Shown in pieces: positions 25,380 through 29,025 of a stretch of DNA of 64,000 bases. The position numbers and the translations under genes were made by a program. The notes beneath the pieces were generated by a model. The model saw only the letters and a program-made list of their open reading frames with translations, was not told the origin of the DNA and did no database searches. The first letter of the stretch is position 1. Every line of letters starts with the position of its first letter. Origin of the DNA: Paraphysomonas bandaiensis (Eukaryota > Protista > Chrysophyceae); the NCBI GenBank assembly GCA_965644295.1, contig CBFFRP010000150.1, forward strand, positions 434,001 to 498,000, read 5' to 3'.

Positions 25380-26813
25380 CTAGGAAGATGTAATTACATT
25401 CCACGCCCACATTTCAAATGCTTTAGCAGCAGCCAGAGCTATACTTTCATCTGATCCTTTGTGATATTTATCCACAGATCGCTTGCCCACACAAAACCCC
25501 ATCACCACAGGCTCCCCAACGCCATCTGTCATGTCTAACCATTCTACCCAATCCAGAATCATTGGGAACTCGGATCCCACATACTCACCGAGCTCATTCA
25601 TATCGCCTGCATAGCATGAAGTATCGTACCACCGGCATAGTCCCGTGACAGGCTTGGGCCACCATCTCGTCGTGTAGCGTAATATAACCTTCTCACAACA
25701 TCCCATTCGAATACGATCCAGAGACTTCATATGCATTTCTGGTAGATTTGGGGAAAATAGTATTGTTCTATTCTGAATGACAGAAATCGGTACAGTGCAT
25801 ATGCATTTATCTGCACAGATTATTTCGCCGGTTGCAGTAGTGGCAACCACCCTATTTCCAGACCAGTCGATGTGGGTTACCGGAGTACTAAGACGAACAT
25901 TTAATCCCTCCGCCTCGCTATCTAATAGTGCTACATAACCTTGCTTGATGTAATGATCTTCATTACCAACACCGAGCTCCTCCAATCCCCATACTGCAGA
26001 GGTGTCATCCAGGTCGTACCCAAGGTCAGAGTTGATGTCGCCAGCCACTGCTAAATGAGCCAAAAACTGTTCATCCCTGGGAAAACGAGATATGCTCTGC
26101 TGTAATACACCCATCAGTGGAAGGTCCACTTCCTTCCCGCCATCTGAGGAGCCACTAAAATCGTTAACAGTCACCCAGACGTGGTCGTACACACGCTCCA
26201 CAATACCACGCATGCCAGAAAGTGACCGACCATTGCTAGCAGAACATAATGCATCATGAAAACATGTAGGAACAACATCCAATTCCATTCTATTCACTGC
26301 GTGCTCCGCCATGAAGTTCGTAGGAAACTGTTGGAGCCAAGTTGCCCCCAAATCAACCTTTACTGACTTAACCGAGGAGTCTCTGCCAATATCCACAGTG
26401 TGAACACGCCCCCCAATTCGATCTCTCGCTTCCAAAACTATCACATTCTCGTTTCCGGCCAATTCTCTGAGTCGCGATGCGGCATATATTCCAGCGGCCC
26501 CGGCTCCTATCACGACGTAACTCAACGCTCCATCCGACGCTGACTCATACATCATATTGGCAGCTCTCAAGCCGCTGTACGCCGCCCCGTGCACCATAGA
26601 TGGCATATGGTCTGTACAAGCTTCGCCGGCTAGTATGAGAGCATCGGAAATGGGAGAGCCTAGCACTACACGATCACTAGGGCTGCCATTCACCCTAAGC
26701 TGAGACCATGCGCCCTGAGAGTAAGGGTTCTCGCTCCAATGGGAGACTTTCCATTCCACTGGTGTGTGCTCTTTATCATGAAAGAATTCAGTCCGTGAGG
26801 AATAAGAATGCAT
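25380..26813 (-). CDS. Flavin-containing amine oxidase, circularly permuted, intronless (477 aa from ATG 26813)
   Basis: WSENPYSQGAWS / LILAGEA / VHGAAYSGLRAA precede VVIGAGAAG..VLEARDRIGGRV..DLGATW. Confidence 0.9.
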   Translation of the reverse strand: MHSYSSRTEFFHDKEHTPVEWKVSHWSENPYSQGAWSQLRVNGSPSDRVVLGSPISDALILAGEACTDHMPSMVHGAAYSGLRAANMMYESASDGALSYVVIGAGAAGIYAASRLRELAGNENVIVLEARDRIGGRVHTVDIGRDSSVKSVKVDLGATWLQQFPTNFMAEHAVNRMELDVVPTCFHDALCSASNGRSLSGMRGIVERVYDHVWVTVNDFSGSSDGGKEVDLPLMGVLQQSISRFPRDEQFLAHLAVAGDINSDLGYDLDDTSAVWGLEELGVGNEDHYIKQGYVALLDSEAEGLNVRLSTPVTHIDWSGNRVVATTATGEIICADKCICTVPISVIQNRTILFSPNLPEMHMKSLDRIRMGCCEKVILRYTTRWWPKPVTGLCRWYDTSCYAGDMNELGEYVGSEFPMILDWVEWLDMTDGVGEPVVMGFCVGKRSVDKYHKGSDESIALAAAKAFEMWAWNVITSS

Positions 26814-26838: not shown

Positions 26839-26843
26839 GTATG

Positions 26844-26874
<31 letters not shown>

Positions 26875-26927
26875 GTATGTATGTATGTATGTATGTATGT
26901 ATGTATGTATGTATGTATGTATGTATG

Positions 26928-26958
<31 letters not shown>

Positions 26959-27329
26959 GTATGTATGTATGTATGTATGTATGTATGTATGTATGTATGT
27001 ATGTATGTATGTATGTATGTATGTATGTATGTATGTATGTATGTATGTATGTATGTATGTATGTATGTAGGTATGTATGTATGTATGTATGTATGTATGT
27101 ATGTATGTATGTATGTATGTATGTATGTATGTATGTATGTATGTATGTATGTATGTATGTATGTATGTATGTATGTATGTATGTATGTATGTATGTATGT
27201 ATGTATGTATGTATGTATGTATGTATGTATGTATGTATGTAGGTATGTAGGTATGTATGTATGTATGTATGTATGTATGTATGTATGTATGTATGTATGT
27301 ATGTATGTATGTATGTATGTATGTATGTA
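26839..27329. repeat. (TATG)n microsatellite, left arm (~490 bp)
   Basis: Direct reading; rare TAAG/TAGG variant units. Confidence 0.98.
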
Positions 27330-28913
27330 CAGTGCACTCTCGATATGATCAAGGGTCTGTACCATAGGCAAACTATTTCTCATAACGAGAGTGTTGACCA
27401 TTAGAAACCCCAGTTTTATTTTATAGAAACCATTTTTTTTGTAAAAAACCCGGTTTTGTAGAAAAAACCCAGATATTTTTTGTAAAACTCAGTTTTTGGA
27501 TATTAAAACCATGGCTTTATGCTCAAAACTCCTACCTCTATGTTTAAATATTTAAAATAGCCTTGTTATTACATCATAGGCATGCGTTGTCTGATCTTAG
27601 CTACAATAGGACAGCTGTATAACCTAGAATTACTACATAACTGCTATAGTGTAGAATTAGATCTCTGCACCGAGAAAAATTGTTGTATCGTTCGTTGTGA
27701 CGAAGATTTTGCGCGCTTCTCTAAGTAACTTCTAGTCACTTCTGAAGCGGTCTTAACAAACGTGTAGTGCCAGGTAGCAGAATTTTCACTACTACTTTCC
27801 ATAGTAAAGTCATATACAACTCGCATGGCATCATTGAATTGATTCAAAGTTACCGTAGATGAAGACGCGCGGTCTATATTTGTATCACTTTGACAATCAT
27901 CATCCACCAGCGGTATTTGCGGAGAAATAGAAAAAGATTCCAAGCGCTCCATGGCTTCCTCAATTTCAGTTTCGACTACCAATTGATCACTTTCAACATC
28001 ACACCATCACAACAGCATCTTCCAATTGTTTCATCACTGCAATACCGTTCACCTTTCCATACATCATCCAGTATATTCATACAGTCCAAGATATGTGGTT
28101 TCAAACCGTACATAATTCCTTTGCAAACAGATTAACATGAATAAAACTGTTTCGACTCTTCAACACATTGTTTAACCAACCGCTCGATGCTTTAAATAAA
28201 CTGCGCGTTTCTTCATCTTCTTTATAGATTATCTATAAAACACAATGTTTAGAATATGTATTATTTTCTTCTGGATCTTGTAGACCTTTGCATAATCCTT
28301 AGCCTTCTGCTGCAGGTACAACCAGCTCAAGCCGCATTTATCCGTCTTGTAGTTTTCTTGGCGAAATTTAATGTAGTCAACAATTTTTTTCTCAACCTCA
28401 GGAAATGAACCCTTCCGTTGCTTCTTGCGGCCTGTGCAAGTTTCTATCTTCAGTGTTCCATCATTGCAGGCTTTAATCCATTTACTTAATGCTGAAGGGC
28501 TAAATATGTTTCCCTTGTACGCAACGAATTGCTTGAGGGTTTTGAAATGACCCTCTTTATATTCTTTCACAAAATTATATTTCTGCACATCCGAGAAACT
28601 ACTCAACGATTTCTTGCGCTTGGTACCGATGCTGCATTCATCTGACATCGCTGCGTACAGCAGACGAACAAATGCAGTAATGTATGTATATGTAATGAAT
28701 GTGTTCATGATTATTGCATACAGCAGTATTGTACTCTCTGCACATATCCAACACTTTCACAAAACCCTAACCCAAAAGAGGGGTTTTTTATTAAAAACTA
28801 AGGATTTATATAAAATGGGGGTTTTCATGCTAAAAACCCCGTACCAATGCCTATTCCGTTTCCCATAACGAGAGTGTTGACCATACATCGATGATCATAT
28901 CGAGAGTGCACTG
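27330..28913 (-). mobile_element. pogo/Tigger (Tc1-mariner) DNA transposon, internally deleted
   Basis: Perfect 22-bp TIR cagtgcactctcgatatgatca, TA TSD; CENP-B-type HTH (RKGSFPEVEKKIVDYI..LQQKAK, intron, FKASSGWL) then a jump to C-terminal PHILDCMNILDDVW; DDE core absent. Confidence 0.92.
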
Positions 28914-29025
28914 TATGTATGTATGTATGTATGTATGTATGTATGTATGTATGTATGTATGTATGTATGTATGTATGTATGTATGTATGTATGTATGTAT
29001 GTATGTATGTATGTATGTATGTATG
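28914..29025. repeat. (TATG)n microsatellite, right arm
   Basis: Direct reading. Confidence 0.98.

What the first reader, a model, noticed from the sequence alone, without database searches (positions are those of the whole stretch)
25380..26813. Circularly permuted, intronless flavin amine oxidase
Seen: the block that normally ends MAO/PAO/LSD1-type oxidases (W..xPY..GAWS, L.LAGEA, VHGA..SG.RAA) is at the N-terminus, joined by a short linker to the GxGxxG/LEARDRIGGR Rossmann motif, and the protein stops (AAAKAFEMWAWNVITSS) just where that block would normally start. Known: canonical N- and C-termini are adjacent in the FAD domain, so permutation is structurally feasible. Inference: a natural permutant. 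The lack of introns suggests horizontal acquisition; I recall similar architectures in actinobacterial proteins but cannot verify this. The aromatic-cage positions look altered (GAWS; PSMVHGA), hinting at a different substrate.
Basis: partly seen in the sequence, partly recalled or inferred. Interest (0 to 1): 0.75.

Follow-up and report, generated by a model that had tools for sequence, protein, structure and literature searches.

The report
Naturally circularly permuted flavin amine oxidase
A marine protist carries an intact, single-exon gene for an FAD amine oxidase whose usual last 80 residues come first; the same rearranged order is shared by about a thousand mostly bacterial proteins, so this is a real and apparently undescribed permuted enzyme subfamily, not an assembly or splicing artefact.

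Summary
Window 25380-26813 (minus strand) is one uninterrupted 477-codon gene. Residues 8-87 match the C-terminal FAD block of LSD2, LSD1 and polyamine oxidases. Residues 99-165 are the N-terminal GxGxxG Rossmann unit. The chain ends after the helix that normally precedes the C-terminal block.

It is not a local accident. 105 of the 148 relatives and locus ORFs I classified have the same order over their full length. They include about 9% of sampled Pseudomonadaceae species, some Actinomycetota, and a small clade from marine eukaryotic contigs at 44-52% identity. AlphaFold gives one compact fold (pLDDT 93.9, pTM 0.93). Sequential structure alignments to LSD2, PAO and Fms1 stop where their C-terminal block starts.

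The catalytic Lys (K375) and the FAD motifs are kept, so it most likely works as an ordinary H2O2-forming amine oxidase. The substrate is unknown.

Ancient bacterium-to-protist transfer is plausible. Intron absence is no evidence for it, because the host's canonical oxidases are also single open frames. Base composition is host-like.

I found no paper, solved structure or NCBIfam model that describes the permutation. Expression is untested. The scan noted this same stretch once before in an overlapping window, and not on other DNA.

The parts
25380..26813 (-). Complete single-exon CDS, 477 codons plus TAG stop: circularly permuted FAD amine oxidase
   Evidence: collinear over 95-97% of its length with homologues P0001, P0002 and the Pseudomonas proteins
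26553..26792 (-). Residues 8-87: the block that is C-terminal in canonical enzymes (W..DP..GAWS strand, LAGEA FAD motif, VHGA..SG.RAA helix). Includes W36 (26706-26708) and M73 at the two 'cage' positions
   Evidence: phmmer to LSD2 692-772, LSD1, SMOX, PAOX and Fms1 C-termini; AF2 strands 20-23, 37-40, 59-61 and helix 74-91
26520..26552 (-). Residues 88-98: short linker that joins the ancestral C-terminus to the ancestral N-terminus
   Evidence: Between helix 74-91 and strand 99-102 in the model. Linker length between the two HMM blocks is 5-6 aa in most family members and 158-159 aa in the P0003 group
26319..26519 (-). Residues 99-165: Rossmann beta-alpha-beta with GAGAAG (103-108) and LEARDRIGGR (127-136)
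   Evidence: Pfam NAD_binding_8 2e-12 at 101-164; invariant columns G103, G105, G108, E128, R132, G134, G135, R136
25383..26318 (-). Residues 166-477: substrate-binding domain and remaining FAD-domain segments, ending in helix 455-476, which is the new C-terminus
   Evidence: VIA-align: model 90-475 = LSD2 376-744 (Z 23.4), 97-471 = maize PAO 5-378, 97-475 = Fms1 9-411
25689..25691 (-). Codon of K375, invariant in the family, aligned with the Lys of the LSD2 'EKIAL' motif (the flavin-N5 water-bridging Lys of this enzyme class)
   Evidence: Invariant column K375 in A1 and A2; alignment to LSD2; the role of the Lys is from established knowledge (maize PAO K300, LSD1 K661, MAO-B K296)

Best explanation
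The gene encodes a functional-looking member of a naturally circularly permuted subfamily of flavin (FAD) amine oxidases. The chain begins with the segment that in MAO, PAO and LSD enzymes closes the FAD domain at the C-terminus. It runs through a short linker into the Rossmann GxGxxG unit and then through the substrate domain. It ends in the surface loop after the helix that normally precedes the C-terminal block. The three-dimensional fold is therefore the ordinary two-domain amine-oxidase fold with new chain ends. Inferred chemistry: hydride transfer from an amine C-N carbon to FAD, reoxidation by O2 to H2O2, with K375 holding the N5 water. The substrate is unknown; a small polyamine-like or other nitrogenous metabolite is the best guess. 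The permutation arose in bacteria, probably once, by duplication-fusion and trimming. The protist lineage most likely obtained the already permuted gene from a bacterium long ago.
For: Shown:
- Swapped block order.
- 105 of the 148 relatives and locus ORFs I classified have the same order in one chain; the ~95 permuted clusters among the top 120 hits stand for about a thousand sequences.
- 18 of 201 sampled Pseudomonadaceae species genomes carry a full-length permuted gene in one open frame.
- The AF2 model has pLDDT 93.9 and pTM 0.93 with no disordered part.
- The best structural neighbours are LSD2, LSD1, maize PAO and Fms1 (Z 21-23), aligned only over model residues 90-475 and ending where their C block begins.
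- All 24 invariant columns are kept, and 69 of 81 columns that are at least 85% conserved; most changes are conservative.
- In the tree of un-permuted rows the window lies in a core permuted clade (SH-aLRT 100) together with the Pseudomonas proteins. It groups with P0001, P0002 and P0004 (95), then P0003 (95), then P0007 (99).
- P0003 sits on a eukaryotic contig next to an intron-containing PTPA gene.
- The window itself is eukaryotic: BK channel, eRF1, kinases, a 62.5-Mb genome.
- A single origin of the permutation is not rejected (AU p = 0.227).
Against: - There is no transcript or protein evidence. The exact protein is absent from the 15-billion-protein collection.
- A 491-bp microsatellite ends 25 nt upstream of the ATG, so expression is unproven.
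- One near-invariant Asp is Cys here (C184).
- The best tree splits permuted proteins into a core clade and 11 Tat-exported ones mixed with canonical proteins, so more than one origin, or a reversion, is not excluded.
- Most core-clade sequences are unnamed metagenome proteins, so the donor lineage and even the direction of transfer are inferred, not shown.
- Bacterial gene neighbourhoods differ between lineages, so they give no substrate.
Confidence: 0.85

Rival explanations
1. Artefact of assembly or annotation: a collapsed tandem duplication, or the last exon of one copy run into the first exon of the next, with the true mRNA spliced to a normal C-terminal exon.
For: Sequence after the final Asn codon (AAT|GTAATT) resembles a splice donor. 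Eukaryotic amine oxidase genes are often multi-copy.
Against: There is no second C block or DNA repeat of the 5' block anywhere in the window, and only one copy in the 62.5-Mb genome. Bacterial and eukaryotic homologues start and stop at the same places in single ORFs.
Confidence: 0.02
2. An intact-looking but unexpressed or decaying relic of an old transfer, with no present function in the protist.
For: There is no matching protein in public collections. D184C and a few other non-consensus residues occur.
Against: The gene has 477 codons without a stop or frameshift and all invariant residues are kept. Its conservation score (0.85) is within the range of other family members (0.79-0.95 and above). 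Related eukaryotic copies at 44-52% identity are also intact, which implies long-term purifying selection in the clade.
Confidence: 0.1
3. Bacterial contamination of the assembly.
For: The nearest named relatives are Pseudomonas, and the gene has no introns.
Against: The gene lies inside a contig of at least 498 kb, between eukaryotic repeats and eukaryotic genes. GC is 0.48 and GC3 0.46, like neighbouring host ORFs and unlike Pseudomonas loci at GC 0.61-0.67. Identity to bacterial proteins is only 35-41%.
Confidence: 0.01
4. The permuted gene arose in eukaryotes and moved to bacteria, or the eukaryotic and bacterial permutants arose independently.
For: The core clade is a polytomy, and most of its members have no taxonomic name.
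Against: The eukaryote-type sequences form one small, well-supported clade of five clusters. The permuted family has at least four other subclades, and a further Tat-exported permuted group and its nearest canonical relatives are bacterial where named. Window and Pseudomonas proteins share the same break point and core clade (SH-aLRT 100).
Confidence: 0.06

Closest known systems
LSD2/KDM1B and LSD1/KDM1A amine-oxidase domains (PDB 4fwe, 2z5u and others)
   Same: They are the best sequence and structure matches (phmmer 8e-33; VIA-align Z 22-23 over about 350 residues). They share the FAD motifs, the same Lys, an aromatic residue at the first cage position and a non-aromatic one at the second.
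   Different: The chain order is permuted. There is no SWIRM domain, Tower insert or zinc fingers, and the protein has only 477 aa. Identity is 20-25%. A histone substrate is not expected.
Polyamine oxidases: maize PAO (1b37), yeast Fms1 (1z6l), human SMOX (7oxl), PAOX (5lae)
   Same: Size and two-domain fold are the same (Z about 21). ESM-Atlas look-alikes are spermine/acetylpolyamine oxidase clusters.
   Different: The chain order is permuted, identity is 17-22%, and the substrate is untested.
Bacterial proteins annotated 'flavin monoamine oxidase family protein' / 'FAD-dependent oxidoreductase', 407-416 aa, of Pseudomonas citronellolis, nitroreducens, delhiensis, putida, veronii and others (e.g. 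WP_085622599.1)
   Same: They have the same permuted order, the same break point and the same core clade, at 35-41% identity over 95% of the length.
   Different: They are shorter (5-6 aa linker, no 30-aa insert near residue 400). They sit in bacterial catabolic-type neighbourhoods (LysR plus an AbrB-family membrane protein, NCS1 permease, GNAT plus EamA). None that I could find has been studied.

Membership tests
Flavin-containing amine oxidoreductase (Pfam PF01593, GR2-type FAD fold) | Profile match above the curated cut-off | tested here: met
   158.2 bits against a cut-off of 19.8
Flavin-containing amine oxidoreductase (Pfam PF01593, GR2-type FAD fold) | GxGxxG dinucleotide-binding beta-alpha-beta followed by an acidic residue and the RxGGR motif | tested here: met
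   GAGAAG 103-108 and LEARDRIGGR 127-136, invariant columns
Flavin-containing amine oxidoreductase (Pfam PF01593, GR2-type FAD fold) | Second FAD-binding block (GEA ... HGA..SG) and the conserved active-site Lys | tested here: met
   AGEA 62-65, HGA 75-77 and K375 are all present and aligned to LSD2, but the block is at the N-terminus
Flavin-containing amine oxidoreductase (Pfam PF01593, GR2-type FAD fold) | Canonical linear order: Rossmann first, FAD block last | tested here: not met
   The order is swapped. It is a member by homology and fold but a topological variant.
Flavin-containing amine oxidoreductase (Pfam PF01593, GR2-type FAD fold) | FAD binding and amine-dependent H2O2 production | not testable with these tools
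   Needs purified protein
Permuted amine-oxidase subfamily (unnamed; defined here) | C-type FAD block, short linker and Rossmann unit in one ORF; chain ends after the helix that precedes the block in canonical enzymes | tested here: met
   HMM block positions: N block 15-87, Rossmann 99-164, tail 281-472, the same order as in the other 104 permuted sequences
Permuted amine-oxidase subfamily (unnamed; defined here) | Falls inside the permuted clade in a tree that includes canonical relatives | tested here: met
   Core clade SH-aLRT 100. Monophyly of all permuted rows is not rejected but not shown (AU p = 0.227).
LSD1/LSD2 histone demethylases | SWIRM domain and, for LSD1, the Tower insert, next to the oxidase domain | tested here: not met
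   Pfam finds only Amino_oxidase and Rossmann-type families in the 477 aa
Polyamine oxidase (PAO/SMOX/Fms1) | Oxidation of spermine, spermidine or their acetyl derivatives | not testable with these tools
   There is only fold and feature similarity. A GNAT acetyltransferase lies next to the gene in two Pseudomonadaceae genomes; this is a hint only.

The most novel reading that the evidence does not exclude
Flavin amine oxidases include a large, so far undescribed, circularly permuted lineage. It arose once in bacteria from Tat-exported canonical enzymes, later lost the signal peptide, spread in Pseudomonas and other bacteria, and was captured by marine heterotrophic stramenopiles. Its re-wired chain goes with a substrate specificity not yet known for this enzyme class.
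Probability: 0.35. Interest if true: 0.65.

Novelty: new variant of a known kind. Interest (0 to 1): 0.55.

Why it matters
Natural circular permutants of large two-domain flavoenzymes are rare, and they are useful. They show which chain connections the GR2 FAD fold can do without, and they give ready-made templates for engineering MAO/LSD/PAO-type enzymes, for example new termini for fusions or sensors. They also mark a clean evolutionary event that can be traced across bacteria and into protists. The linker that joins the old termini tolerates from 5 to about 160 residues in nature. The family is common enough, at about 9% of sampled Pseudomonadaceae species, that a model enzyme can be expressed at once. 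For genome annotation, the finding warns that 'two Amino_oxidase hits in swapped order' is a real architecture and not a gene-model error.

Tried and rejected
I could not fetch the contigs of P0001, P0002, P0004 or P0007, so I could not check their eukaryotic origin or why P0004 lacks the N block.
It returned only two permuted loci (L007, L008). Five others that looked permuted from the merged tblastn ranges (L012, L013, L019, L023, L030) proved canonical once their ORFs were classified.
- Viral contigs gave no relative. The metagenome scan gave only the P0003 contig.
- NCBIfam has no model for the family.
- Three literature searches for a permuted flavin amine oxidase found nothing relevant; one search failed on syntax.
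- The ESM Atlas gave only generic polyamine/amine oxidase clusters.
- An apparent 'fossil' Rossmann fragment upstream of the N block in L008 was my own printing error. The protein really starts with a Tat signal.
- Bacterial neighbourhood analysis gave no common partner beyond regulators and transporters.
- I did not run the large representative search or a search to name the host organism, because the verdict does not depend on them.
- The window is not human. No spliced model was needed.

Full report
**What is there.** The window is eukaryotic. It holds a 1375-aa BK-type potassium channel in one ORF, an eRF1 fragment, protein kinases, an FHA protein, microsatellites and transposon remains, in a 62.5-Mb, 669-contig genome. 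Earlier notes of this scan call the organism a colourless marine chrysophyte (Paraphysomonas); I did not test that. On the minus strand a frame is open from 27401 to 25380. Everything upstream of 26813 is the translation of an (ACAT)n array at 26839-27329. The gene proper runs from the ATG at 26813 to the TAG at 25380-25382, which gives 477 codons without interruption.

**Check of the observation.**
- Pfam Amino_oxidase matches in two stretches (158 bits). Residues 107-436 lie on profile positions 2-331 of 443.
- phmmer against PDB chains places residues 8-87 on LSD2 692-772, the end of that chain. It places 98-158 on 338-391 (Rossmann unit) and 286-391 on 525-631.
- The first 95 residues alone hit 37 distinct PDB sequences, always at their C-terminal ends.
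- So the block that normally closes these enzymes is at the front, joined by an 11-residue linker (88-98) to the GxGxxG strand. The chain stops after the helix that normally precedes the block.

**Artefact or architecture?**
- A tblastn and blastn scan of the whole window finds no second copy of the block. The genome has one copy of the gene.
- The word search returned homologues that align over 95-97% of the query in a single local alignment.
- I built HMMs of the three blocks and classified 148 sequences. 105 have the permuted order and 37 the canonical one.
- Permuted proteins start and stop where the window protein does.
- They include many Pseudomonas proteins of 407-416 aa annotated only as 'flavin monoamine oxidase family protein'. 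In a sample of 201 Pseudomonadaceae species genomes, 18 carry a full-length permuted gene in one open frame.
- The roughly 95 permuted clusters among the top 120 hits stand for about a thousand member sequences.
- The architecture is therefore a family trait.

**Structure.**
- AlphaFold2 with an alignment of 70 permuted sequences gives mean pLDDT 93.9 and pTM 0.93. No segment falls below 50.
- Foldseek and VIA-align rank LSD2, LSD1, maize polyamine oxidase and yeast Fms1 first (Z 21-23). These sequential aligners cover only model residues 90-475, matched to LSD2 376-744, PAO 5-378 and Fms1 9-411. The match ends where each target's C-terminal block begins.
- Together with the sequence match of residues 8-87 to that block, this is what a circular permutation predicts.
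The 3D position of the N block is therefore inferred from the high pTM and from homology.

**Integrity and chemistry.**
- All 24 invariant columns of the family alignment are kept. They include G103, G105, G108, E128, R132, G134-R136 and K375.
- K375 aligns with the Lys of the LSD2 'EKIAL' motif. From established knowledge this is the Lys that holds the water at flavin N5 (maize PAO K300, LSD1 K661).
- Of 81 columns conserved at 85% or more in the other 69 sequences, the window protein agrees at 69. Most differences are conservative. The notable exception is C184 in place of a near-invariant Asp.
- The first 'aromatic cage' position is Trp36, which is Tyr in the Pseudomonas proteins. The second is Met73, which is conserved family-wide and corresponds to Thr in LSD enzymes. 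This is an LSD/PAO-like pattern, not a peculiarity of this gene.
- I infer an ordinary FAD-dependent amine oxidation with O2 as acceptor. The substrate is unknown.
- Bacterial neighbourhoods vary. Eight Pseudomonas loci have a divergent LysR regulator and an AbrB-family (PF05145) membrane protein directly upstream. One locus has LysR plus an NCS1 permease. Two have a GNAT acetyltransferase plus an EamA exporter. One has two SDRs. The Actinomycetota MAG has a purine-nucleoside permease. This suggests catabolism of an imported small nitrogen compound and nothing more specific.

**Evolution.** I moved the N block of each permuted sequence to the end, so that all rows were collinear, and built a tree of 74 rows.
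- A core permuted clade (SH-aLRT 100) contains the window protein and the Pseudomonas proteins.
- Within it the window groups with P0001, P0002 and P0004 (95), then P0003 (95), then P0007 (99).
- P0003 lies on a marine metagenome contig next to a PTPA gene split by an intron, so that contig is eukaryotic. P0004 comes from contigs of 389 and 678 kb.
- Eleven further permuted proteins, among them Euzebya rosea and an Actinomycetota MAG, carry Tat-type signal peptides. They mix with Tat-bearing canonical proteins in a poorly resolved region.
- An AU test does not reject a single clade of all permuted rows (p = 0.227). One origin is therefore possible but not shown.
- The eukaryotic sequences are one small clade inside a family that is bacterial wherever it is named. 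That favours a bacterium-to-protist transfer.
- The gene's GC (0.48) and GC3 (0.46) match neighbouring host ORFs, and it is only 35-41% identical to bacterial proteins. Any transfer is therefore old.
- Intron absence is not evidence. The host's three canonical-order amine oxidases are also single open frames of 524-573 aa.

**What is known.** Three full-text searches found no paper on a permuted flavin amine oxidase. No PDB chain shows the order by sequence. NCBIfam has no model for the family. The proteins are in databases under generic names, so the window gene is a new member of an existing but apparently undescribed variant.

**Limits.**
- Expression is untested. The microsatellite that ends 25 nt upstream of the ATG and the flanking mobile elements leave the promoter unclear.
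- The exact protein is not in the public collection.
- Most core-clade sequences have no taxon name.

**Verdict.** This is a genuine, probably functional, circularly permuted FAD amine oxidase that belongs to a widespread, mostly bacterial permuted subfamily. It probably entered a protist lineage by ancient horizontal transfer. It is moderately interesting, as an undescribed topological variant of a very well studied enzyme class that is directly testable at the bench.

Noticed in passing
window 26839-27329: An (ACAT)n array of about 123 units ends 25 nt upstream of the oxidase start codon. A second (TGTA)n array at 28912-29025 and a pogo-like HTH ORF (28229-28708, minus strand) lie beyond it. 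The promoter of the oxidase must lie in or across the repeat.
   Followed up: partly
L039:387-2396 (P0003, contig MDTB01101876.1): The same permuted oxidase carries an acidic insert of about 158 aa, with a C2H2-zinc-finger-like stretch, exactly in the linker that joins the ancestral termini. The neighbouring gene (L039 2915-4035, minus strand) is a PTPA split by an intron, which marks the contig as eukaryotic.
   Followed up: partly
P0079, P0083, P0086, P0090, P0093-P0096, P0099, P0106; L008:7781-9163: A second group of permuted oxidases starts with Tat-type RRxFL signal peptides, often with a lipobox Cys, placed before the C-type block. The closest canonical relatives also have Tat signals, which suggests the permutation happened in an exported enzyme.
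   Followed up: partly
L007:6830-7924 and seven other Pseudomonas loci (L048-L054): An AbrB-family (PF05145) membrane protein of unknown function lies close upstream of the permuted oxidase, on the same strand, in seven of the eight loci, with a divergent LysR regulator further upstream. In L050 it lies about 6 kb further upstream. This may be an uptake-plus-oxidation unit.
   Followed up: partly
L057:7511-7984 and L058 (same coordinates in my orientation): A GNAT acetyltransferase lies directly upstream and an EamA transporter directly downstream of a divergent permuted oxidase in two Pseudomonadaceae genomes. The arrangement recalls acetylpolyamine metabolism.
   Followed up: no
window 26262-26264 (codon of C184): The window protein has Cys where about 90% of the family has Asp (TDF motif). 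The closest relatives P0001 and P0002 keep the Asp.
   Followed up: no
P0004 / P0126 (ENA contigs of 389 and 678 kb): These close relatives, as called, lack the N-terminal C-type block (432 aa, Rossmann unit at residue 21). This is either a truncated gene model or a real loss.
   Followed up: no
G000 C389:8128-8574, C358:58353-58634, C410:253295-253519 (L002, L005, L006): The host has at least three canonical-order flavin amine oxidases, each in a single open frame of 524-573 aa. Long intron-free genes are normal in this genome.
   Followed up: yes
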